Assembly (NCBI GenBank): GCA_964247055.1
Contig: OZ176055.1
Coordinates: 7,502,001 to 7,566,000 of the forward strand
Source of the DNA: Paragordius varius
Taxonomy: Eukaryota; Animalia; Nematomorpha
DNA: 64,000 bases
Direction: 5' to 3'
The notes under the pieces: model-generated
The model's database searches: none
What the model saw: the letters and a program-made list of their open reading frames with translations, nothing else
Told to the model about the DNA's origin: nothing
In this document: piece after piece, positions 5,089 through 63,594 of the stretch
How positions within the stretch are numbered: position 1 is the first letter of the stretch
Layout: every line of letters begins with the position of its first letter
Program-made: the position numbers and the translations under genes

Positions 5089-6927
5089 ATTTAAGATGTT
5101 AACTCAGAAAGTCCCATATTTTTTAACCTTCAATGTGCTAGTTTTTTAAAACAAATGCAAAAAGGCCGAGATTTCGCAAAATTTTTTAATGCCAGATCAA
5201 TGGGTTTTACCCGCGGCTCTAAAAGTCTTTTTTATGGCTCTAAATTAAATTGTTGACCTACTTATTTTGAGTATAAATATCTGCAAATGAATAGTGCAAA
5301 CATATGAGATTTTTATAAGCATTATAGGTGCGCAGCCCTTGTAGATAAGAGAAATATTTTACGGCCCTTTAAAATTTTTTGGTTAGTACCATACCACTGT
5401 GCTATGTGATCTAAGAAAACATTTTTTGAAAAAAGGCATACTTTGTTCAAAAATTATTTGTAGACAAATTTTGTTAGAATTAAACTATTTGTTTGTCTTC
5501 AAATTTAGTTTTATTTTTGATTCGTTTAAAATCGTTCAACTTAAAAGTTAATTAATCTCTAAATTAAAATTTTGAGGTGATAGAAATGTTTAACATTATT
5601 GAATTATATATAAAAAGTATTTTTATAATATGTTACAATGTTTTTATAGCGCCACTATGCTTTTAAAATTAGTTATAATTTTCCTATAAATTAAATTTTT
5701 GAACAAATTATCCATTTTTTAGGGAGAACTTATTATGATTTCGAAATTCGGCATACATCTAAAATTATTCCAGCCCAATCCTGGCCTTTTTAACATTTAA
5801 TTAAAAAATGGGGTAACTCCCATAGAGACCGTTTAGATGAAAATCGTTTAAACAAATTAATGGCCTTTAAATATAACTTACAGCATGTTGTTGACACAAC
5901 TAGCTGAAGTTGAGGATGAAATAATTATTGATTGATTTTTTAATGTTGGTTCTATATATTTATAAAAATGGAAAATGCTGGTTTTGTGATTTGTTTCCGG
6001 AAAACCGGTAGACCCATTCAAATCCAAATGTCGAAAAAATATAATCATTACTAAATGCCAGGACAATAGCTTCGACCTTTTTTAAATTAGGCCTTCAGTT
6101 CGGGTCCACCCCGTGTAAAAAACCTAGTTAAGACAAGTAGGGATTGGTAAAGGTACTAAATTTCCAAAATCTTAGACTTTCAAATGGATATGTTCTAGCT
6201 TTTCTGGCCATATATTTTCCAAACTGTGAATTTTTTCACAAGGAAAATTATAATCGAGACATACACATTTAAAATCATCTCAGCGGATTTGTGGTATCGT
6301 GGCTGTAAATTTTTCATAAACTGCCAAACCAAACGTTCAAAATAAAAAATATAAATTGACCTAAGTCATATTTTGACGGCCCCTAGGCCTTTGACCTGGT
6401 CGTTAGATTCCTACTCGTATAAGAGTTAAATCCAAAAGCACCATGATAACCATAATTTTTTAAATCAAAATATTTATATATATTTCACCAGGATATTTAT
6501 ATCTTAATGTGTATAAAATCTACAATATAAATGGTGAACGAAATTACAATTTGGGATACATCAAAATGTTTTAGCTACCAAGACTTGTATCGCTTTTGCA
6601 AAACACTTGAACAAAAACTAAAAAAAGGACTCCTCAAACGTTCAAACTTAACTTATTTTAATTAACATAAACTCATTTAACATCATAACTGCCAATGCTG
6701 AATGTGTTTTTCTAATAAATTTTGAGTAAAATTTATTTTTTAACTATTCATGGAAAAAAAATCAATTAACATATAAAAGGATATTGTATTATCAAATATA
6801 AAAGAGAGAGGTAGGCCATGTAGCTATATTTATCATATGTAGATGTATAAATGTAATAAAAATGTTTTTACAGTATTTCAAAATATGTTTTGTGAAAAAT
6901 TCCAGTATGTAAAAACTCATCGAAAAA

Positions 6928-9900
6928 TTATGCCATAAGTGAAAACATTCTGTTGCTTGTATTGCCACTGTTTTTATAACTGAAATCCAAAGGCTCATCA
7001 TCTGATTCTTTATATTCGCTTTCCACATTCTTATTACTGGAAAAAAGATCATTTTTTGCATGTGTTTTATTATCATTAGGGTTATTCTCATTTAAAGACA
7101 TGTAGGCCCGCCAAATTTCTTTTGTAAATTCAAATGATTTCGCATCTTGATTCATTTTGGCCGTATTTGATTGATCAGTAACTATGTGTTTGATGACCCG
7201 ATTTTTCTTTTTACTGTGTATGGTGTTTTGTAAAATGCTTACATGGTTCTGATTAATTTTGGGTTCTTGAAGTAACGATGTTAAACAACTTTGATCAGCG
7301 CTAAAAGCAACACTAAAAAATCGGTTGTTTAATATATAAAATATATTAATAATCTATTTTTCACATCTCTCTACAAATCTACAAGTGAAAATGTATGTTC
7401 AAAATTCTTTAAGCGTGAATCCAGCTTACATATCCCTAATCCTTTTCCCTCCCGTGATAACATTAATATATACAAAAGCTTATACTACTTAAAATTATCA
7501 GGAGATAATCATGTAATATACTATAGATTGATGGTAAAATTTGTGGTATGTATTGAAATTTTATTATTTAAATTACAATTTTAGTCATATAATATATATA
7601 CTCATTTTTCGGTGGATCTATTTTATTCTGGTGTTGTATTTTATCATTGCCATTCGGATCTTCTGTAGCATTGGTATTCGTTGTATTAATGTAATTTAAG
7701 ATCATATTCTGAAACCAATCGTAGCGTGCTGAATCATTTTCTGCCTTAGATTTTGTTATATCTTTCTCAGAAGCTATAATATTTTTTTGGTTTTCTCTAT
7801 CCCGTCCATCGTCATCAACTGTTTGTCCTGCCACATTTTCGGAATCAAAGTTCGATACTTGGTTACTGCTAACATTATTATTATTGCTTAAGAGACTCTC
7901 TATTAATGGATAGTGACCAGCTAATGGCTAAAATGATAAAAAGTTTTTTTATCGAGCATTTAAAAAATGCGCTTTTTGTAAAACTTTAATTTTATAAAAC
8001 AAATATAAGACCTGAGTTTTAGTAGAATCTTGCATATATTTTTGAAAGAATGAGCTGTAATTTTGTTGCAAAAGAATTTGATATTGATACCAACTTTGCA
8101 TGCCTTAACGTATAGAAAAAAAATTTATGAGAAATGTTACCTAAATATATACATAATAATTAACTCCATTTTATAATAATCAATTTAAAATAGTGTGATA
8201 GTCGAGACTCCTCGGCATCCAAAATAAAAAAATTGTTATGACTAAAAACAGTAATTAAATATAAAATTACGTAAATACAACTTACTTTTGAGCAAATACG
8301 GATTCAATAATTGCGTTTGCCAAGCATTTAGATAACTCTCTGGCGTGGGCTCTATTGTTTCGCTATTTTTCGATACTGTCGCATTAGAGGGTTCATTCAA
8401 ACCTTTAGTCAATGCGGTTGATGTTATGGCTCTTTCAATCGAATTTTCATACAATTTAGTTCGACATGAATTTCCTTCGTTCTTAATACTATTACTATTG
8501 TGTGTGGTAGCATCCAACATTTTAAAATTGGGGTTACTTTCAGCCCGACGACGTTTTCTGCCTCCCTTGTTTGCAGGTCCCAAAAATTTACTCATTTCGA
8601 TATGCATCGAGGAATCCGGCATCATTTGATCCTGAGTGAAATTATCGGGTGATATATTTGTGGATGTATGGATAATGCCATCACTTTGGGATGACGATTT
8701 GCGTTTAATAGATGATGCTAATGTCCTATTTACTTTTTGAATTTTAGTGGTTAGTGGTAATGTTTTTGCATTAAGCATATACTCTTGCATTTTTTCTAGC
8801 GTTAACCCATTAATGTCGGAAGAATGTGGTAACTTACAATTTGGTTCAATAGTAATTTTTTCATTAAGGGGTAGAATAACAGTATCACGTTGTAAATTAT
8901 CGCTTGAAATAGAGCATGTGGACTGGGATATATCAGCCTGGGGTGATGGCATATTATTTGCGTCTGATTCTGAATTTCTATGGGAATTTACAGATTCGTT
9001 TGAAGATTTTGGGGTTACAGACGAGGAAGTTTTTATCGTAAAGTTATTGGTATTTTGATGGTAAAATGTTGGTCCCATAGTTGTTAAACAAAGACCTATT
9101 TCAAAAACACATATTTAAATGTCCTGTTTAAAGATTTTTCTCATTTATAAATTATTTTTATGGCCTTTTATGAGTCATGGAACTACTGGCGCGTTTTAGG
9201 GCACTGTTGTCTAGGTCGATAGAAGCCTTTGGGAGTTTTTTTCTGCAATATTATACTGTTTTAGCAAAATATTATGGCCAAGTTGCAATTAAGTCGGTAA
9301 CGGATTTATTTTTCTAGTAAATTATTAGGCGGTTAAAATTAAAAGCTAGCTAGGGTTTTAATGCCATTATTGTAAAATTCGCCTTCCCTAGTAAAAACCT
9401 TAACATTATAAAACATGCAAAAAATTATAATATTGAAAAAATTCCTTGGTTTTTAAAATTCCAATTTAATGATATACCATTTACAGTTGAAAATTGTTGA
9501 ACAATTCAAATTCACCCGCGAACAATTCCAACCTTGAACAATTCAAATTCGCTCTAAAAATAAATTATGTTTTTGAACTAATATAACTCATTAATATAAA
9601 ATATATCTTTATGGCATAGTTATTTTTCAGGATTATTTTAATTTAAAACAAAATTTTATTTTTTAAAATATACAAAAATATAGGTTTTTACTTAAAAAAC
9701 ATATAATTTATTGAGGGTGAGTTTAAATTGTTCATGGGTGAATTTGTTGTTTAAGGGGGAATTTGAATTGTTAATGGTATATTTCTTGCTATTTAATTTA
9801 ATGATACTATTTTTCGATAAAATAATTTAAATTTCAGAGACAAAAATTTTTAGTTCATACCTTTAACAGCGCGACAAATGGTAGATGTTGAAATTTTATC

Positions 9901-10729
9901 TGCCATCATCTCTAACAAATCTTGTTCATCAATATTGCAATTTGTTATGTTAACATCTTCACACCGTAAAATCAATTGTTCAAGGTCGATTAAGCTTGTT
10001 TCACCATCATTTTGACCTAAAGAAAATTTTTAGGATAAACAAAAAGTTGAATTAAAAAAGCAAAAAAATTATTATTGAATTCATTAATCTGGAAAATTTG
10101 AAATTAGACAAAAACCATTTTTTACCTTTAAAAATTTTGGCCTCAACATTGGTATCATTACCGTTAAATTTTAGATCGTTAGTTCCATTTAAATTACCAT
10201 TTTGATGGATTGAGTTGTTTTGTTCCCATTTTTTATTTGCTTTATGTGACAAATTCAAAATTTCTGGATCTGATGATGATGTTGAAAACAATGTTGTTGT
10301 TGACTGTTTCCGTTCTTTCAAATGTTTTAGCATTAATAATCTCTGTATCTGGGCATAGGTGATATTTGGCCATTTCTCCTTCAGGTCTTTGATGTAAGCC
10401 AAATCTGCTCCACTAATTTTCTTTTGTCGGCCACCGGCATGTGGTTTGGGTGAACAGGAACCCGTATTACAAAACCGTTCCCAAATATTTTTGACCGTTT
10501 GCGTGCTCACACTAAATTGTTCCGCTATGGCTATGTAAGTTCCCGGGAATATACGGGTATGTACATCACCCCCTTGAGCCAACATGAGTGTTATAATGCG
10601 TTGACGGAGGCCTTTATCAATAGCAGATCCACTTGTGTAATTTCGGCCTCTACGATTCGTTTTTTCAGAATAACCCAGAAGATGTAATCCAGATGAGGAG
10701 GTTATAGGGCTTGAAATAGCGGACGACAT
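6928..10729 (-). CDS. Paired-like (IS630/Tc1 transposase-type) HTH DNA-binding protein with long disordered C-terminus; putative transcription factor, ~753 aa
   Basis: Exons 10729-10126, 10016-9861, 9095-8286, 7920-7602, 7300-6928 total 2262 nt (754 codons) with all phases matching; this links four separate ORFs of the track. The N-terminus NRRGRNYTSGSAIDKGLRQRII...IAEQFSVSTQTVKNIWERFCNTGSCSPKPHAGGRQKKI...YIKDLKEKWPNITYAQIQRLL follows the paired-domain pattern. Also ISTSTICRAVK, basic KGGRKRRR and EPLDFS. The exon 4 acceptor (7920 vs 7927) and exon 5 acceptor (7300 vs 7312) are slightly ambiguous. Confidence 0.8.
9472..9782. mobile_element. MITE family A copy 1 (in intron 2 of paired-like gene)
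   Basis: TIR ATATACCATT...AATGGTATAT with subterminal AACAATTCAAATTCACCC-type repeats on both arms; same family as 41199 and 63253. Confidence 0.85.
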
Positions 10730-13700
10730 AAATATATTTATATTTATGAGCTTTAAATGAAAACTTATAAATAGTAAGAGCAGGGCGTCTATGGGTATAA
10801 AAGTTTATATTAATGGGGTATCGAAACGAAAAAAATATAAATGTTCTGATTTAGTATTGGTTAAATGCAATATTTATATAATATGGTTTTGAGGTAAAAA
10901 TTGTTAAAGATTTTCTTTTCATGCAACATTAGTGTGGACAATCACAAAGTCCCTTTTCTTAGCATCATTAGAATTTAAGCAAAAAAAACTTTTTTTTATT
11001 GGATCAATCGAAAATAATTATATATGTACACATATATCAAGCAAAAATATTGCAAAGACCATATATATAAATACACTTAATTTATATTTCTTTTTATAAA
11101 ATATCCCCTACCATGACCACTCAAGCCAAGTCTAGAACAACAGAAAAAGTTTTTTCATGCATAAAACTTCAGAAACATGATGAAACATATATCAATTGTA
11201 TATATCAGGGTAAAGGTATAAAATAAAAAAGTGGACAATTCCTCTGACTCGCAAAGCTCTGCAGAATTCAGCAATATTTTAGCACCTTTGTGCATTTCTT
11301 TTACTTTGAATATATTCTAATGATAAAGGAATGACCATTTATCCCTTCTTTTACCTGTAAATAGCGTGTATAAATAATTGTAGATAAAATAATTGATTTT
11401 AGCATTAATCTGCTTCAACCAACAATGAGGAAAAATTAAGGTATTATATGTAGGGATTTGCGTATATAAAAATGCAATTTTAAATCTCCTTGAAATAAGT
11501 TTTAATTTTTTTTTGGCCAAAAATATATTTTGATTGAACAAATCAGGTGTTCTGCAAAATATCGGTATTGAGTTAATGCCATTTATAATGCACGTAATTT
11601 CAAATAATTTATAGAATCCAATATTTTTTAAAAACTATATTTCACGTTTTTACATTTTTTGTTTTTTTTATTTATGATATTATTTATTAAATAAATATAA
11701 CTTGACCTACAATGCATAATAGATGGTGGTGGTCACTTTTTTTAGGTTTTACAATTATTTTATAATAATATTTTTTTATAGATTGGATTCAATAAAAAAT
11801 CATGTTTTAAAAATATTCCTAACACCTTACCTCAAAAACGTCCACTTTCCTGTCGCGATAAAAAATCATATATTTTTTTATTTTTTTACTAAAATTTTTT
11901 ATACCTGATGAATGGAATGGTCAACCACAATACAAAGCATTAATTTTATTTATAATCAATATTTTGTAATTATTTTAAAAAATCGGGGGCAAACTAACAT
12001 ATTTTTTTTCAAAAATATAATTGGTTCAGTTTTGAAAATAGCATGCCTAAGCGTTAATTAATTATTTCAATAAAAAACAATATACAGATATTTCTTACAC
12101 ATATGCAATTATTCCCGTAATTTCTTTTAATTTTCTCATACACGGGCACAGGTAAAAGAGATTGAACAAAAAGATTTTAGATATGATAAAGGGGGGGGGG
12201 GGGGGGTATTGTTTTTTAATACAACTTTTTTCCCCCAAATTAATCTAATCTAATCATTGTGTGTACCTGTGCAATAATTTTTCAAAACATTCTCTCAGGG
12301 AATAATAAAAAACATAATAATTCTGATTGACCAGTAATTAACCTGCAAATACTAAAACAATTTTTATGTATGATCAATTTTCATTCATGAAAATCTCTGA
12401 TTTTAAGGAAAAAAAACTTTAGAAAAAAATAAGGTCATATTTACTTTTTTTCATGCATCACAAAATGGCTCAACAAAACTAACTGACCATTTAAATAATA
12501 ATAGTGCGAAAAATATATAATAGAGGACTGATTAAACAAAAAACATGATTTGATAATATGTTTCTTGTATGTGGTTTCATTCTTTACTTTTTATAATTTA
12601 TGTGATTGTGTGCTATAAAAATATTTACCTGTCCAATCACGAGAACTAAGTTTTGATATTTTTTGCTGTATACTTATAATATATATATATATAAAGATTG
12701 TAAAAAAGAGTGGACATTACAACACCTTTGCGCGATTTTACTCTGAATGAATAATAGCAATAATAATATTAAAATTTATTAAGGCTAAAAGGTCAACAAT
12801 AATTTATATGATGTGGAATAAGTAAAGGTTTTTTCATTATTCGATAAATTTTTAAGTTAAAAATTATTTTTATTTTTTAAAAAAATATAATTAAAATGAA
12901 TAGTGTCAACCCCCGGGTGTAAGTTTACTAATTTTATAATTAAAATAAAGATCATAGGGCGTTGTTACAATAGAATGGGCAAATATTTCCAGTCTGTTTA
13001 AATTATTCAATAAGTAAGGTATTTAAATAAAATTATAATTACATAACATTGATATATAAATAAATATTAAAAAACACAATCAAATATTATTTGGTCATTT
13101 GATTTTCGGATTTATTTAAAGGTAAAAATTTTGACAATTTGCTAAAGTATTAATTGCTATTTTGACCATGTTTTGTCAAAACTAATACAAGTAGATTTGG
13201 TAACTAAATGTAAGATTTAAAACTGATCAGATTTTTAATTTAAATTGAATTCTAATATAATTAAAACAATCTTAGACTATCTGATTGTAAAACCTTATAT
13301 TATATTTCGAATAAAACAGTATCTTGAATATATTTCAAGTTGTGTTTTTATGGTAAAAAATATTTTCATTTTGTCATGTTTTATAATAACTTGCTAAATG
13401 TTTATTGAAAAAAATAAAAGTTTTACCATATTGTGTGTTCTTTATTAAAAATTTTCCCTATGGTATTTATACCATCCTTTTCTGTACATAAGGATAAAAT
13501 ATGGAAAGTGTATATATAAATTAATTAATTATCAATTATAAACTCATATTTTACTAATGGGCAATGACCTTTTATAAATACCTACTTTATACTTGTGGTG
13601 ATTGAATTTTATTTTAGTGTTAACGGACACCATTTTGATACTGGTATGTTTCAAGATAAGTAATCTAATTATATATGTATGTACTTAATATTTTAATTAC

Positions 13701-38418: not shown

Positions 38419-41400
38419 ATCGTGGCAAGTTCACTTTAATTCGTTGATTAATACAGGCCAACGTTGAAATATGATAGCATATTATATTTGACGTCGATGT
38501 AAGTTCTATTAAATGTTATATAGTGTGTCAAATAAAGTTTAAAATTAGGATTCAGCTTTCGGTAATGACCATTAAAAAAGTTAAAATATCATAAAAATAT
38601 AAACCACTCTAAAGTTAAAAAAATTTGTTTTTATTTATTTCAAATAAAATTAAATTTTTTATAAAATAATGTGTTTTGTCATATAGTTTTGAAAAGGAAA
38701 ATTTAAATTTTTTGGGTAGTGGCCTAGTCTCTGACCTTAAGTTGAGATGAACAAAAAATTTATTAATAAAACAGTGCTAAATGGGCGTCTGACAATATAT
38801 CCTAATAATATAGTATATATAGATGTATCATTTTTAGTTTTGGGCCTGAGTTATATTTCAGAAAAAATCCATATTGAAAAATCGCAATATTAGCGCACAT
38901 ATAAACATTATGGTGGAAGCATTCCAAAAATTTTTGTTAAAATATATTCTAAACTATTCCTAAAAAAACTATATTACTTAACTATTATTAAGATTTGTAA
39001 ACTACGAAAATCTCAAATTTTTGGACTCTTCAAAATCCATAGTTATTTATTTTATAATAAAATCAGAGTCGATATGCGATAAGAATTTCTAACCTAGAAT
39101 ATGACATCAAAATTTTTTTTAAAAAATACATTATTAAATTTAAATTTTGGCACAACATTGTTGAATATTTTATGGTATTGCAAAGTATAACTTTTAATTT
39201 TAGAAACTTTCTTTATTATATAACCATTTCTATCACGTCAGATTTTTGATTAAATATTTTGGCTAAATTAATGAAGTGTTGTTTTTCACAAAAAAATAAT
39301 TAAAAATAATAAAGCATTTAAATATAGTATCGCGATAAAATTTTTAATTAAATTATGTAAAAAAAATTATATTATACCATTTGCGAGTGTCCTTAAACAT
39401 TTCAGGTTGGTCTTAAACACTCCAAGTTGGCCGTTCAACACCTCAAGGTGGTGCTTAAAATCTTTAACCATAATTTTTGCTTTTTTATTTATTCTTTTTT
39501 AACCAATTTTATTTATTTATATATTTATTCTTTTAAAAATAAAAAAAAATTATTCAACCACTTTTATTGTTTTAAACTAATTTTCCAATTTAGCATAATT
39601 ATTACCTTATAAATGTTTTTAATGAATAATTGTATTTGAAACCCTAGTAAACTTATATATTTATATATTTGTTTAAATCTTAAAAATACATAATATAAAT
39701 ATTACAAAATTATTAAAAATATACGGTTTTGGAATAATTTTAAAATTGATATTAATTTAAAGATTAAGAAAATAAATGATAAAATATATGAATGATACAC
39801 GATTCGATTGATAAAAATAAAAAACAAAACAAAAAAATCAACTTGAAGTGTTCATGGATCAACTTGAAGTGTTCAAGGACACTCTTGAAGTGCAAATGGT
39901 TTATTATCTTGTTTACAGTTCTTTTCCATCATGCTACAAATTTTCAAAATATGCTTAGATATAATTTTGTCTGCCAAATTTTTATTTCGAAGATAATTTA
40001 TTTTGATGTCATTTTGTTATATTAAAAATATTCTCTCAACATATATAACTTATAAGGCCTAAAAACAAAAGCATCAAGAAATTCCGGTACATTTTTCTCA
40101 TATATATATATATATATTTATTTCACCGGGATATTTTACTGTGTAGTAAAATTAGTTAACCTGACCTTATGAAAGTAAAAAAATATTACACCGCTATTTT
40201 GAGATAGATGGAGGAGTTTTTTCACTTGGATCGATTTTATATAAATCGATGCGCCACGACAGTGTTTAATTGTGTATTCGCCTTTTAGCTATGCGACTTG
40301 AATTAATTGATGGGTCTCAATAAAACATGATAAGCGTTTTAATAAAGATTATATAGGCACTTTCTATCATGACACCGTATATATGGTAGGTAAAGAAATT
40401 AAAACAATATTTTACCCTTTCGTTATCACTTTATGAAACTTTTTTGATTTAGTTATTTCTACTTGTATTTTATCATATTGTTACATTATATGCAAATTTT
40501 AAATATATATTTGGTATGTATGATATAGTTTTTAGTGAGATATGCATTGTCTTATTTTAATATTTTTGTATTATGTAAATAACATATCCATTTAGTTACT
40601 CGAAATTTTATTTGTTTTATTTGATATCGTGCAAATTATGTTCACTTAAAAATAGTATATTAAGAGTATAAAAAACCGAATAAATATCTTTCAAGTTTTA
40701 CGATTTATACTTTTGTTACTTTTTTACACATATCCAGTATTATGTCGACGTAGATCCCAGAGAGTTTCTCTGGTTGGGACTTCGAAACACATCTTCTGAT
40801 AAAGTATATGGAGCCCGGGATATACCAAACAATAAAATAGATGAGATAGTACAATTGATAATGCCAAAGTATAGTTTGATAAAAAACGAGAGGCCATATC
40901 TGGTAAGTATCATTTATTTTCCATCCGTTAATTTGTAATAAAAACTTGTATATTTCTTTATATAAACAAAGACCAAAATAGTTCAAAGTCTTAATGGGAA
41001 GCTTGCCATTTATGATTTTTATCAAGATTTTGTTGTTCTCAGGAAACAGAGCTTTTATACCCTATATGGAGAACTGTTAACTCGTCTTTATATGAAACGG
41101 ATTATCGAGAACATTATAGCAGGAAATCCTTCATATTTCAATATGATAATTGATTTTTGTGGAAAGGATGGTATTTATTAACATCCGTTTATATTTAAAT
41201 ATACCTCGTACTCTTAAATGCACCCTTGAACAATTCGAAATCACCTGAAAACAATTCAAATTCACTCTAAAATAAATTATTAGATTTTTGAAAAAAAAAA
41301 TACCTATATTTTTTAATATTTTTAAAAAATGTAATTGTTAAAGATATATTTTATATTAATAATTTATTATATTAGCCCGAAAACATATAATTTATTTTTA

Positions 41401-41801
41401 GGGTGATTTTGAATTGTTCAAGAGTGAATTGGAATTGCAAATGGTATATCAAAACATGTAAACGTTCTAAAAAATAACAATTTTGAGATGGATGATTAAA
41501 AACTATATGTTTTTAGTGTAAAGCTTTACTAGGTTTATTTCAAAATTGAATTTTTATATTAGGAAAGACGCGGTATATTCTGGTTATAAACCCTTGACTT
41601 CAGTAAATTAAATAATTTATATCCTCCTCCAAAAATTTAAATTATTATATTAAAAAAACAAGATGTTAAAGGTTTAAAGATCTTTTGCATTTGGCGAAAG
41701 CCGTATATAAAATTAATATTGCCACATCGAAAATCCTAACGAAAAGCAAAAAATATTTATACCCATATCGCCAAAATTTGCTTAAAAATATTGTTTATTG
41801 A
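37839..41801 (+). CDS. Uncharacterised, probably secreted protein (no recognisable domain)
   Basis: Open exons with good splice sites at 37839-37987 (signal-like MLFMRGKLHNILILCLYGILGHQCYLIEA), 38165-38330, 40738-40902 and 40972-41170; phases are consistent in series. Possible extra exons at 40208-40261 and 40335-40385. The 3' end is either 41680-41801 or continues to small exons near 44667-44826. Confidence 0.65.
41199..41449. mobile_element. MITE family A copy 2 (left end degenerate)
   Basis: AACAATTCAAATTCAC repeats and right TIR AAATGGTATAT, as in the 9472 and 63253 copies. Confidence 0.75.
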
Positions 41802-60820: not shown

Positions 60821-63233
60821 TTATCCAAGAGGTTTAAGTATAGTCGAATTAAAGGATGCCAATCTAAGCGTAAGAGTATTTTCATCGCTGTATAAAAGGG
60901 CTAAAATATCAGTGTGTAATGCATTACTGGCAAGTTTTCCATTTATTTCAACTATAACATCATTGATGGCAACAAGCCCACATTTATCGGCAGGTGATCC
61001 TGGAACTATACTCTATAAATTATAAAAAAATGCTATAAAGTCATTTGATAATTCGTTACTTTAGATGTTTTTTTTTAAATTTTTATGGCATTCAATCCTT
61101 TTTCTCCGACAAGATATGTTTGTTATATTTTCATTTAATATCTTTTATATCTTATACATAAACAACACCAATTAAAAACCACGCAAACTGTAATTTATCG
61201 TGTGGTTTATAAATTATTTTTTGGTTAATTTTTTTGCTTGCTTTACAGCAAAAAAGGTTAAATTTTCATTTGTATGACAATTATATTTTATCTTTTAAGA
61301 TAACATTCACATATACCAAAGCAAACAAAGTAAAAATTAGAAATTTAATTATATCTTTTTGGTCTAAAACTACCCTTAATTTTACTAGCCATAACGTTTA
61401 GAGATCAAACAAAACTGGATGAAAATATATCAATAATTGGCACAAAGTTTTTAATCGCATTTCAAAAAAGACGCAGATGCAAAGTAGAATGTGTTTTTCT
61501 ATAGCTTAGTTATAAGAACAAAGAAATACTTACAGATACTAAATGCTGTATAGTGTATCCCGAGTCAATAGCTGTTGGCAATGGACAACAGCTATGTTTT
61601 GTTTCATCCACAACACAATGTTTCTTGACATGTGGAAACTTTTGTGTTGTTGGGTGGTAAACTTTGACAGTTTTAATGCCTAACCCAAATCCACTTTTGT
61701 GGGACCGAGCTTTATTATTATGTTTAATTTTATTACAGAGTGGTGGTGGTGATGATGATGTCACATGGGGTTTAACCAATTTAACTGGCGGTTTAATACG
61801 TGTAATAAATGGGGGATACTTACAAGATTTGGTGATAAAGGTTGAAGAACTTTTGTACCAATTTGTATTGGTTTTATATTGATAACATTGTTGTATTACC
61901 TCGTCTCCATTATTTAATGCCGGATTATTACGATATTGATCTGATTCTTTCACGATATCGGGATGATAGGACAGCCGTCCACTATTAGGTACATGTATTA
62001 AAGGACATTTTGTGCGTTGAAACAAATTTGCTTTATTATGACTATTTATGTGTTTCGTTTCACCGGGCATTCGTTCACAAGATGTTGAGTGATGATTATT
62101 AGTTTTATCACCATAATACAATTTATTTAAATTTTTTGTTTCGGTGATACCCGTTGCGTGATTCGGAATGTTTTTAGTAGAGGCGGCAAAATAATGATTC
62201 GAAGAGTGGGGATGTCTCATTGACTGTGAATATTGTATTGTTGTAGTTGATTTGCGAAAACCCGGAATATCAATATTAGGCAACGGAGATACCGATGAAC
62301 GCGTCGTAAAACTTAACGGAGAGGGCTTAGGGAACCGAGTTAAAAATTTGGGTGAAGATTGGAAAAATATGTTTGGGTTCTGTGCGAACTTTCCTTCTTC
62401 CTTCCCACCATACGGGATAGATTTTGCGCTGGCCGTCGAATTGTGTTTATGGGGACTCACATAACAACCTTCATGCAGCACGAGTGGTGAAAGATTTGCC
62501 ATCTGGGGATATCGTTTATTCTTTGTCGAATTTAGTGGTGCGGCGGTACATTTGGAAAAACTGTAAGACTTTTTGTGCTGTGAATTATTCTGTCGTTGCA
62601 ACATATTACTTTGACATAGGTTGTCACTAGTATTTCTATTATCATGGGCAAACACAAATGTATTTTTATTATTTAAATTATTGTGGAAGGAACTGGTAAT
62701 ATTGTTATCCACATTATCATCCTCCAAATTACCTATATAAAATTTTTTGCGCACAGTATTTTTATCATTCACCTTTCTGTCTTTAGCCGTGCCACGTGTG
62801 AAAGAATTTGGTGTAGGAGTTGTTGTATTAACAGTAATCACATTAGAATTCGTTTTAAAAGTTTTAGAAGTGGCTGAAGAAAATTTCAAATTAGGATCGC
62901 ATTTATAATCAGGACTACACATGGTGGTTACTGCAAAAGTCGGTCCAAAGAATATATCGTTTGTTGTTAATGTTGGCTGTCCCTGTATGTATTGGTGCTT
63001 TGGAGTATCCCCCGATCTATTGGATAAACTTTTGGTAGAGGTATGATTATCTATTCCTTCAAATGTGGCAGTGATATCGCTTTTGTAAGGCTGATCGGAT
63101 GAACAGGGTGATGCCGGTTGTTGTAAGTGACTGGAAGATTTGGATAACAATTTGAGATAACTGGGCGAACTTGAAGCAAAATGTGGTAACATCAAACATG
63201 ATGTGTTGTTAATAAAGATTGTCTTATCATCAG
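60821..63233 (-). CDS. 3' part of a PDZ-domain protein, MAST-kinase-like (upstream exons beyond the window)
   Basis: Exons 63233-61534 (1700 nt, S/T/N/P-rich) and 61012-60821. The joined PDZ reads GFGLGIKTVKVYH...GYTIQHLVS|SIVPGSPADKCGLVAINDVIVEINGKLASNALHTDILALL...FNSTILK. This resembles the recalled MAST PDZ (GFTLRAIRVY..YTVHHMV..GGPA..HTEVVELI..ENTSIK). No kinase domain is visible in the window. Confidence 0.7.
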
Positions 63234-63252
63234 CTATATATGTATGTATAAT

Positions 63253-63594
63253 TATACCATTTACAATTCAATTTCACCCTTAAACAATTCAAATTCACCC
63301 TTTAACAATTCAAATTCACCCAACAATTCAAATTCACCCAACAATTCAAATTCACCCTCAAATAAAATATATGTTTTTATATATTTTTCAAAAATATTGT
63401 TTTAAATTAAAATAATACTGAATAAATAATAAACTATACCATAAACATATATTTCATATTGATAATGAGTTGTATTAGTTTGAAAACACATAATTTATTT
63501 TTAGGGTGAATTTGAATTGTTTAAGGGTGAATTTGAATTGTTCGAGGGTGAATTTGAATTGTTCAAGGGTGAATTTGAACTGTAAATGGTATAT
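63253..63594. mobile_element. MITE family A copy 3 (in intron of PDZ gene)
   Basis: TIR TATACCATTTAC/GTAAATGGTATA, with 4-5 tandem AACAATTCAAATTCACCC units per arm. Confidence 0.9.

What the first reader, a model, noticed from the sequence alone, without database searches (positions are those of the whole stretch)
6928..10729. Candidate domesticated IS630/Tc1-type transposase: paired-like DNA-binding domain on a five-exon transcription-factor scaffold
Seen: the N-terminal ~130 aa follow the paired-domain pattern but lack Pax diagnostic residues (no NQLGG, RPLP, SHGCVSKIL). There is no recognisable DDE domain, homeodomain or flanking TIRs. The gene has four spliceosomal introns, an intact 2262-nt frame and a basic KGGRKRRR stretch. 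Established: the paired domain derives from Tc1-like transposases, and transposase DNA-binding domains have repeatedly been captured as host regulators. Inference: an independent, possibly lineage-specific Pax-like transcription factor.
Basis: partly seen in the sequence, partly recalled or inferred. Interest (0 to 1): 0.8.

Follow-up and report, generated by a model that had tools for sequence, protein, structure and literature searches.

The report
Hairworm gene built from transposase DNA-binding domain
A single-copy, intron-bearing gene of a horsehair worm keeps only the Pax-like DNA-binding part of a cut-and-paste transposase; its conservation in the hairworm Gordionus makes it a second, independent example of how Pax-type regulators can arise from a jumping gene.

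Summary
A minus-strand gene at 6928-10729 starts with a bipartite paired-type (beta-hairpin + PAI + RED) DNA-binding domain. It has no DDE domain, homeodomain or TIRs.

My GT-AG, phase-consistent model has six exons and 2301 nt, not five exons and 2262 nt. The last RED helix (KISTSTICRAVK) lies in exon 2, beyond a disordered insert and intron 1.

A search of 1.84 billion representative proteins found one ortholog. It is a 946-aa unnamed protein of Gordionus sp. (Nematomorpha), 65% identical over the domain, and it shares the position and phase of intron 2.

The next hits are N-termini of intronless, multi-copy transposases of about 358 aa with DDE_3 domains and D-88/90-D-37-E triads. A profile built from these transposases alone scores exon 1 at 125 bits. 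Pfam PAX gives 22.6 bits.

Profile and fold comparisons put this whole group closest to Pax paired domains (E 4e-10; Z 10.5-10.7, against 5.9 for Tc3).

Between the two worms silent sites are saturated (pS 0.87) and dN is 0.22. The five variants listed in the conserved core and exon 2 are all silent.

Verdict: a domesticated DD37E-type transposase DNA-binding domain, probably a sequence-specific nuclear regulator, seen so far only in hairworms. It is a new member of a known kind. No RNA evidence was available.

Other agents' notes already called this genome a Gordionus relative. None covered this gene.

The parts
6928..10729 (-). Whole coding span of the gene: six exons, five introns of 181, 765, 182, 84 and 289 nt, 2301 nt of CDS
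   Evidence: GT-AG sites and continuous phase, with no internal stops. Every frame-breaking indel listed among DNA runs falls outside the exons, and the one exonic indel is +3 nt.
10198..10729 (-). Exon 1 (532 nt): start codon, beta-hairpin, PAI, linker, RED helices 1-2, and the start of the variable insert
   Evidence: Donors at 10162 and 10126 would keep the same phase.
10325..10669 (-). Conserved core of the DNA-binding domain (aa 21-135)
   Evidence: Over aa 21-151 it is 65% identical to Gordionus P0002 (E 8e-48). It scores 125 bits to a transposase-only N-terminal HMM and 22.6 bits to Pfam PAX. dN is 0.22 with pS 0.87.
9861..10016 (-). Exon 2 (156 nt)
   Evidence: Phase 1 in and out. Its donor, after the first base of the Gly codon that follows CRAVK, is at the same place and phase in Gordionus.
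9862..9900 (-). Displaced third helix of the RED sub-domain (DKISTSTICRAVK)
   Evidence: The 12 residues KISTSTICRAVK are identical in Gordionus inside otherwise unalignable sequence (z 8.3). HMMER aligns the Gordionus copy to transposase profile positions 121-133. In the model it is a helix at 273-282 with pLDDT about 75, and structural alignments to Pax5, Prd and Pax6 run through it to the end of the paired domain.
8286..9095 (-). Exon 3 (810 nt): low-complexity, probably disordered tail
   Evidence: It lies in a 278-aa ORF. Only 3 of 9307 stop-to-stop frames in the window reach 250 codons. No Pfam hit.
8545..8568 (-). Basic KGGRKRRR stretch, a candidate nuclear localisation signal
   Evidence: The function is inferred from composition only.
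8012..8103 (-). Exon 4 (92 nt), needed to keep the frame between exons 3 and 5
   Evidence: Supported only by splice sites and phase.
7602..7927 (-). Exon 5 (326 nt)
   Evidence: No Pfam hit.
6928..7312 (-). Exon 6 (385 nt including the stop); an acceptor at 7300 keeps the same phase
6973..6999 (-). Conserved C-terminal motif DEPLDFSYK (Gordionus: DQPLDYSCK), about 20 residues from the end in both proteins
   Evidence: A local alignment of the last 45 aa scores 41, against 20.4 +/- 4.1 for shuffles; 2 of 2000 shuffles reach it. The segment was chosen after seeing the motif.

Best explanation
This is a host gene of a horsehair worm (Nematomorpha). It arose when the N-terminal DNA-binding domain of a Tc1/mariner-superfamily transposase with a DD37E catalytic signature was captured, and the catalytic domain and terminal repeats were lost.

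The retained domain is of the paired type: a beta-hairpin, the PAI three-helix unit, a linker and the RED three-helix unit. It is now fused to a tail of about 530 residues that is low in complexity and probably disordered. The tail carries a basic stretch that looks like a nuclear localisation signal and a short conserved C-terminal motif.

The gene predates the split between this worm and Gordionus. Both share a long disordered insert between RED helices 2 and 3, and both share the intron right after the third RED helix.

Shown: homology to the transposases, loss of the DDE domain and TIRs, orthology with Gordionus, purifying selection on the domain, and a paired-domain fold.

Inferred: the protein enters the nucleus, binds specific DNA with both sub-domains as Pax proteins and Tc1-type transposases do, and uses its tail to recruit partners. 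That would make it a lineage-restricted transcription or chromatin regulator.
For: - One ortholog turned up among 1.84 billion representative proteins. P0002 is CAK9304908.1 from Gordionus sp. m RMFG-2023, 946 aa, E 1e-48. No other long relative was found.
- The next hits are intronless DDE_3 transposases of about 358 aa with intact D-88/90-D-37-E triads, in multi-member clusters.
- A transposase-only HMM scores exon 1 at 125 bits, against 22.6 bits for Pfam PAX.
- The family profile matches Pax5, Pax8, Pax6 and Prd at E 4e-10 to 4e-9 over the whole paired domain.
- The AlphaFold model of the Gordionus N-terminus has pLDDT 82-98 over aa 1-120. It matches Pax5, Prd and Pax6 at Z 10.5-10.7, against 5.9 for Tc3.
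- Intron 2 has the same position and phase in both worms.
- pS is 0.87 (saturated) and dN is 0.22. Codon position 3 is 38% identical, positions 1 and 2 are 76% identical.
- Listed population variants in the conserved core and exon 2 are 5 silent and 0 replacement.
- There is no DDE remnant and no TIRs.
- Depth over the exons resembles the flanks, unlike the MITE in intron 2.
- The two hairworm sequences group together with 100/100 support on a long stem among the transposases.
Against: - No RNA evidence exists for this worm. All runs that hold the locus look like DNA, so splicing of exons 3-6 onto the domain exons is inferred.
- The tail is not significantly similar to the Gordionus tail, apart from the C-terminal motif.
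- No flanking synteny with Gordionus could be shown.
- Pax sequences were not in the tree, so the placement against Pax rests on score differences and the shared insert, not on a rooted phylogeny.
- DNA binding, nuclear localisation and any regulatory role are untested.
Confidence: 0.72

Rival explanations
1. The origin is the same (a domesticated transposase DNA-binding domain), but the job is different. The protein would bind the ends of related transposons or MITEs to repress their movement or to organise chromatin. KP-type repressors and CENP-B or Abp1 work this way. It would not regulate host genes.
For: - The ancestral role of this domain is to bind transposon ends (established knowledge of Tc1/mariner transposases).
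- The genome is rich in Tc1/IS630 elements (earlier notes; not checked by me).
- An extremely abundant MITE, with arrays of 19-21-nt sub-terminal repeats, sits in intron 2 and twice more in the window.
Against: - No link between this MITE and the DD37E family was shown.
- Conservation of the domain across a divergence with saturated silent sites, together with a long stem branch, suggests a stable host function rather than an arms race with one element family.
- No member of the source transposase family was seen in the window or in the Gordionus locus.
Confidence: 0.18
2. The real product is a short protein of about 230 aa made only of the DNA-binding domain. It would come from exons 1-2 with read-through into intron 2, like Drosophila CG4570. 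Exons 3-6 would belong to a separate downstream gene.
For: - Read-through past the exon 2 donor meets a stop after 2 further codons here and after 6 in Gordionus.
- Exon 3 has its own in-frame ATG at 9078.
- DBD-only domestications of 225 aa are documented (PMC13548663).
Against: - The exon 2 donor is conserved in position and phase in both worms.
- The Gordionus annotation joins the domain to a long tail, using a BRAKER/TSEBRA pipeline that drew on RNA-seq and protein hints.
- That tail ends in the same C-terminal motif as here.
- All parts lie on one strand within 3.8 kb, with consistent phases.
Confidence: 0.08
3. It is a highly diverged genuine Pax gene, for example a homeodomain-less Pax that evolved fast in a parasite.
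For: - Pfam PAX just passes its cut-off (22.6 against 22).
- The fold matches Pax best.
Against: - The related transposases score the same on Pfam PAX (16-24 bits).
- Gordionus P0002 falls below the cut-off (18.9 bits).
- Exon 1 scores 125 bits on a transposase-only profile and shares the transposase-specific insert absent from Pax.
- Direct similarity to Pax6, Pax8 and Pax5 is E 0.5-1.
- No homeodomain or octapeptide-type family was detected.
Confidence: 0.02

Closest known systems
Pax proteins (paired domain, Pfam PF00292; structures 1K78, 1PDN, 6PAX)
   Same: It has the same bipartite architecture: beta-hairpin, PAI, linker and RED. The family profile hits Pax5, Pax8, Pax6 and Prd at E 4e-10 to 4e-9, with structural Z of 10.5-10.7 over 118-127 residues. 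Like Pax, it is a transposase-derived domain in a host gene without a catalytic domain (origin of Pax as cited in PMC4901127).
   Different: It is not a descendant of the Pax lineage, because it is much closer to extant DD37E transposases. It has an extra segment of about 9 residues between PAI helices 1 and 2. Its RED domain is split by an insert of 72-150 residues and an intron. It has no homeodomain or octapeptide. It is known only from hairworms.
DD37E-signature Tc1/mariner (IS630/Tc1/mariner) transposases of about 358 aa with a DDE_3 domain
   Same: The N-terminal roughly 115 residues are homologous (30-43% identity, E down to 1e-20). The hairworm pair branches among them.
   Different: It has no DDE_3 domain, no TIRs, depth like single-copy flanks, spliceosomal introns and a long unrelated tail. 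I could not tell which named DD37E group (L18, mosquito/MS or TRT; PMC10379824) the source family belongs to.
Drosophila CG4570 and cag, Tc1/mariner DNA-binding-module domestications (PMC13548663)
   Same: It follows the same pathway. Only the N-terminal helix-turn-helix module is kept, orthologs are conserved and the gene is under purifying selection.
   Different: It comes from a different phylum and source family. The domain is fused to a tail of about 530 residues, whereas CG4570 is a 225-aa protein. Its expression is unknown.
CENP-B, Tigger-derived genes and SETMAR
   Same: These are also host proteins that reuse a bipartite transposase DNA-binding domain.
   Different: They derive from pogo or mariner. 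Their structural similarity is much weaker (CENP-B Z 5.5, SETMAR Z 5.0).

Membership tests
Pax (paired-box) family | Paired domain that scores above the Pfam PAX gathering threshold and clearly above non-Pax proteins | tested here: inconclusive
   Exon 1 scores 22.6 bits against a cut-off of 22 and Gordionus P0002 scores 18.9. The related transposases score 16-24 bits, so the score does not separate it from transposases.
Pax (paired-box) family | Closer to Pax paired domains than to any transposase | tested here: not met
   It scores 125 bits to a transposase-only profile. phmmer against Pax6, Pax8 and Pax5 gives 12-13 bits, E 0.5-1. It has the transposase-type insert that Pax lacks.
Pax (paired-box) family | Paired-domain fold (beta-hairpin, PAI, RED) | tested here: met
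   The model of the Gordionus ortholog gives Foldseek E 1.6e-5 to 1.3e-4 and VIA Z 10.5-10.7 to 6PAX, 1K78 and 1PDN. The window's own protein was not folded.
Pax (paired-box) family | Accessory homeodomain or octapeptide (present in many Pax proteins, not all) | tested here: not met
   No Pfam hit in exons 2-6 at E up to 5.
IS630/Tc1/mariner transposase (autonomous element) | DDE/D catalytic domain | tested here: not met
   There is no DDE_3 hit. tblastn with 24 full-length relatives matches only their N-termini.
IS630/Tc1/mariner transposase (autonomous element) | Terminal inverted repeats flanking the gene, and multiple copies | tested here: not met
   There are no flanking inverted repeats. 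Exon depth in DNA runs resembles the flanks. The Gordionus cluster has one member on one contig.
IS630/Tc1/mariner transposase (autonomous element) | N-terminal bipartite helix-turn-helix domain homologous to the family | tested here: met
Domesticated transposase gene (criteria as in PMC13548663) | Conserved ortholog in another species with shared gene structure | tested here: met
   The Gordionus ortholog is 65% identical over the domain and intron 2 has the same position and phase.
Domesticated transposase gene (criteria as in PMC13548663) | Purifying selection | tested here: met
   dN is 0.22-0.26 with saturated pS of 0.86-0.87. Listed variants in the conserved core and exon 2 are 5 silent and 0 replacement.
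Domesticated transposase gene (criteria as in PMC13548663) | Stable genomic position (microsynteny) | tested here: inconclusive
   No other ORF within 10 kb of the Gordionus gene matches the window.
Domesticated transposase gene (criteria as in PMC13548663) | Transcription | not testable with these tools
   No RNA run holds the locus. The runs laid on it cover introns as well as exons.

The most novel reading that the evidence does not exclude
Hairworms independently repeated the birth of Pax. A paired-type transposase domain from a still-extant DD37E family became a phylum-restricted developmental regulator. Its binding sites were seeded across the genome by the sub-terminal repeats of an abundant MITE family. 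This would give a living model of how the proto-Pax gene and its regulatory network arose.
Probability: 0.1. Interest if true: 0.8.

Novelty: new member of a known kind. Interest (0 to 1): 0.5.

Why it matters
The origin of the Pax paired domain from a Tc1-like transposase is a textbook inference drawn from one ancient event. This gene is a much younger, independent capture of the same kind of domain, and the donor transposase family is still recognisable.

The pair therefore allows before-and-after comparison of what changes when a transposase DNA-binding domain becomes a host regulator. The changes seen here are loss of the DDE domain, gain of introns, a split RED sub-domain and the addition of a disordered tail.

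The gene also adds a candidate lineage-specific regulator to Nematomorpha, one of the least studied animal phyla. The Gordionus ortholog is recorded only as an unnamed protein product.

Tried and rejected
- **Word-index search with exon 1:** found nothing useful, because of the length filter. The same search with the Gordionus protein, restricted to residues 1-135, found only the query itself.
- **RNA evidence:** no RNA run holds the locus. The four runs laid on it behave like DNA, so the splice model could not be checked.
- **Synteny with Gordionus:** no shared flanking ORFs.
- **Similarity of the tail exons to the Gordionus tail:** exons 3-6 are not above shuffles (z 0.1-1.4). Only the last 45 residues are.
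- **TIRs of the closest intact transposase (L002):** only weak candidates of 17-19 nt. I could not compare them with the local MITE.
- **A true Pax gene:** rejected on score differences and the shared insert.
- **A dead transposon relic:** rejected on selection evidence and the shared intron.
- **C-terminal motif as a CtBP-binding site:** PLDFS/PLDYS resembles the PxDLS motif. From memory, that motif requires L or M at position 4, so I do not claim it.
- **MAFFT alignment A1:** it did not align the displaced RED helix with the transposases' third helix. HMMER did.
- All searches were exon by exon. The fold used the natural Gordionus protein, residues 1-290.
- **Earlier findings by sequence:** blank.
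Full report
**What is there**

The window is very AT-rich (about 27% GC). On the minus strand between 10729 and 6928 lie several long open frames: 225, 278, 88 and 75 aa ORFs. Canonical GT-AG sites join them.

My model has six exons:
- Exon 1: 10729-10198
- Exon 2: 10016-9861
- Exon 3: 9095-8286
- Exon 4: 8103-8012
- Exon 5: 7927-7602
- Exon 6: 7312-6928

Together they total 2301 nt with consistent phases and no internal stop. Exon 3 ends in phase 1 and the acceptor at 7927 opens in phase 0, so the 92-nt exon 4 is required. Alternative donors at 10162 and 10126, and an alternative acceptor at 7300, keep the frame and cannot be excluded.

Support for the model from outside the frame itself comes from DNA runs of the same or closely related worms. 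All eleven listed indels that lie outside my exons include every frame-breaking one, and the only exonic indel is +3 nt. That list is partial. No RNA run holds the locus, so splicing is inferred.

**The domain**

Exon 1 gives the following family matches:
- Pfam PAX: 22.6 bits against a cut-off of 22, covering model positions 6-111 of 125.
- HTH_32: 3e-5.
- The N-terminus of IS630 transposases: 6e-6.
- Direct similarity to Pax6, Pax8 and Pax5: only E 0.5-1.

No other exon hits any Pfam family. No part of the window matches the catalytic half of related transposases. No inverted repeats flank the gene.

**Relatives**

The word-index search was blank, so I used the exhaustive search of 1.84 billion representative proteins. 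It returned one strong hit, P0002. This protein is 946 aa, E 1e-48, 65% identical over 131 residues. It is CAK9304908.1, an unnamed protein product of Gordionus sp. m RMFG-2023, a horsehair worm. Its locus is 28% GC. The published Gordionus montsenyensis assembly is 26.9% GC.

Earlier notes of this scan, by other agents, also call this genome a Gordionus relative. I treat that as a lead that agrees with my result.

The other hits are different in kind. About 260 proteins match at E up to 1e-3, mostly 30-43% identical. They are short fragments or proteins of about 358 aa. The full-length ones carry Pfam DDE_3, are single intronless ORFs, sit in clusters of up to 112 near-identical members on many contigs, and have D-88/90-D-37-E triads. 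They are therefore Tc1/mariner-superfamily transposases with a DD37E signature. I could not assign them to a named DD37E group (L18, MS or TRT).

**Pax or transposase?**

A profile built only from the transposases' N-termini scores exon 1 at 125 bits, against 22.6 bits for Pfam PAX. The transposases themselves score 16-24 bits on Pfam PAX, so a borderline PAX hit is a property of the whole group.

The hairworm proteins also share a segment of about 9 residues (GGD...FPG) between PAI helices 1 and 2. The transposases have it and Pax5 and Pax8 lack it.

In a maximum-likelihood tree of the domain, the two hairworm sequences group together with 100/100 support on a long stem (0.97). Their position among the transposase lineages is unresolved.

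This transposase group, including the hairworm gene, is nevertheless unusually Pax-like:
- Its profile hits Pax5, Pax8, Pax6 and Prd at E 4e-10 to 4e-9 across the whole paired domain. Sleeping Beauty reaches only E 0.05.
- An AlphaFold model of Gordionus residues 1-290 has pLDDT 82-98 over residues 1-120 and shows a beta-hairpin plus PAI and RED helices.
- That model matches 6PAX, 1K78 and 1PDN first with Foldseek (E 1.6e-5 to 1.3e-4).
- With VIA it matches them at Z 10.5-10.7 over 118-127 aligned residues. Tc3 gets 5.9, CENP-B 5.5 and SETMAR 5.0.

**A split RED sub-domain**

In the transposases the third RED helix (consensus vSlStisRavr) follows the second RED helix after about 10 residues. 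In both hairworm proteins the matching segment is far downstream. KISTSTICRAVK sits about 72 residues later here, in exon 2 (9862-9900), and about 150 residues later in Gordionus (aa 270-281).

Evidence that this segment is the third RED helix:
- It is 12/12 identical between the two worms inside otherwise unalignable sequence (z 8.3).
- HMMER aligns it to profile positions 121-133.
- The model makes it a helix with pLDDT about 75, while the insert scores below 50.
- Structural alignments to the Pax structures run through it to the end of the paired domain.

The alignment used for the model placed another helix (aa 121-131) opposite the transposases' third helix. Which helix packs in that position is therefore not settled.

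**Age and selection**

The intron after this helix lies after the first base of the Gly codon that follows CRAVK in both species. Both also have a phase-1 intron inside the insert. The source transposases have no introns, so the intron-bearing host gene existed in the common ancestor of the two worms.

Over the 131 gap-free codons, pS is 0.86-0.87 (saturated) and dN is 0.22-0.26. Third codon positions are 38% identical, against 76% for positions 1 and 2.

Of the listed population variants, the five in the conserved core and exon 2 are all silent. Exon 3 has eight replacement and five silent changes.

The tail is not alignable between the species, with one exception. The last 45 residues share D-E/Q-P-L-D-F/Y-S-Y/C-K about 20 residues from the C-terminus. 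Their alignment scores 41, against 20.4 +/- 4.1 in shuffles, and 2 of 2000 shuffles reach it. I chose that segment after seeing the motif. This ties the last exon to the same orthologous gene.

**Likely function**

The following are shown:
- a paired-type DNA-binding domain under strong constraint;
- loss of catalysis and of mobility;
- a long, fast-evolving tail of low complexity with a basic KGGRKRRR stretch.

By inference, the protein is nuclear. Each sub-domain would bind a half-site, as in Pax proteins and Tc1-type transposases, and the tail would recruit partners through short motifs.

A role in transposon control or chromatin organisation is the main rival. A DBD-only short isoform cannot be excluded.

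**Comparison and novelty**

The mechanism of origin is the one proposed for Pax and documented for Drosophila CG4570 and cag (PMC13548663). This is therefore a new member of a known kind.

Its particular interest lies in four points:
- The captured domain is of the Pax type.
- The donor family is still recognisable.
- The RED sub-domain is split.
- The gene is so far restricted to hairworms.

Papers on nematomorph genomes in the library do not mention transposases.

The window's own domain was not folded; the natural Gordionus protein served as proxy.

Noticed in passing
window 9496-9778 (intron 2), 41227-41420, 63260-63586: A MITE-like element has ends that carry 2-5 tandem copies of a 19-21-nt unit (GGTGAATTTGAATTGTTCA) in inverted orientation. 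The motif matches 16 times in the window, against 0.07 expected by chance. Summed contig depth over 9483-9639 is about 1-1.7 million in three DNA runs, against 300-1000 for the flanks. It is therefore one of the most abundant repeats of this genome.
   Followed up: partly
proteins P0008, P0026, P0029, P0159 and relatives; locus L002 3001-4077: A family of intronless DD37E transposases of about 358 aa has an N-terminal domain that matches Pax paired domains far better than Sleeping Beauty does. By profile, Pax scores E 4e-10 and SB scores 0.05. The family could be the extant group nearest to the proto-Pax transposase. Its host organisms and its named family were not determined.
   Followed up: partly
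proteins P0109 (616 aa, match at 447-613) and P0055 (376 aa, match at 216-346): Two hits carry the same paired-like domain away from the N-terminus. They may be other fusions or captures in unknown organisms.
   Followed up: no
window 61510-63195 (-): The longest ORF of the window (561 aa) is rich in Ser, Thr, Asn and Pro and has no Pfam family.
   Followed up: no
window 6500-11200, run X4: A run labelled as a different organism (organism B) holds low-depth contigs that are nearly identical to this locus. The sample could be a host that contained the worm, or a mislabelled or closely related sample.
   Followed up: no
window 10303: One DNA run has an in-frame CTG insertion in the variable insert of exon 1. 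This fits relaxed length constraint in that loop.
   Followed up: no
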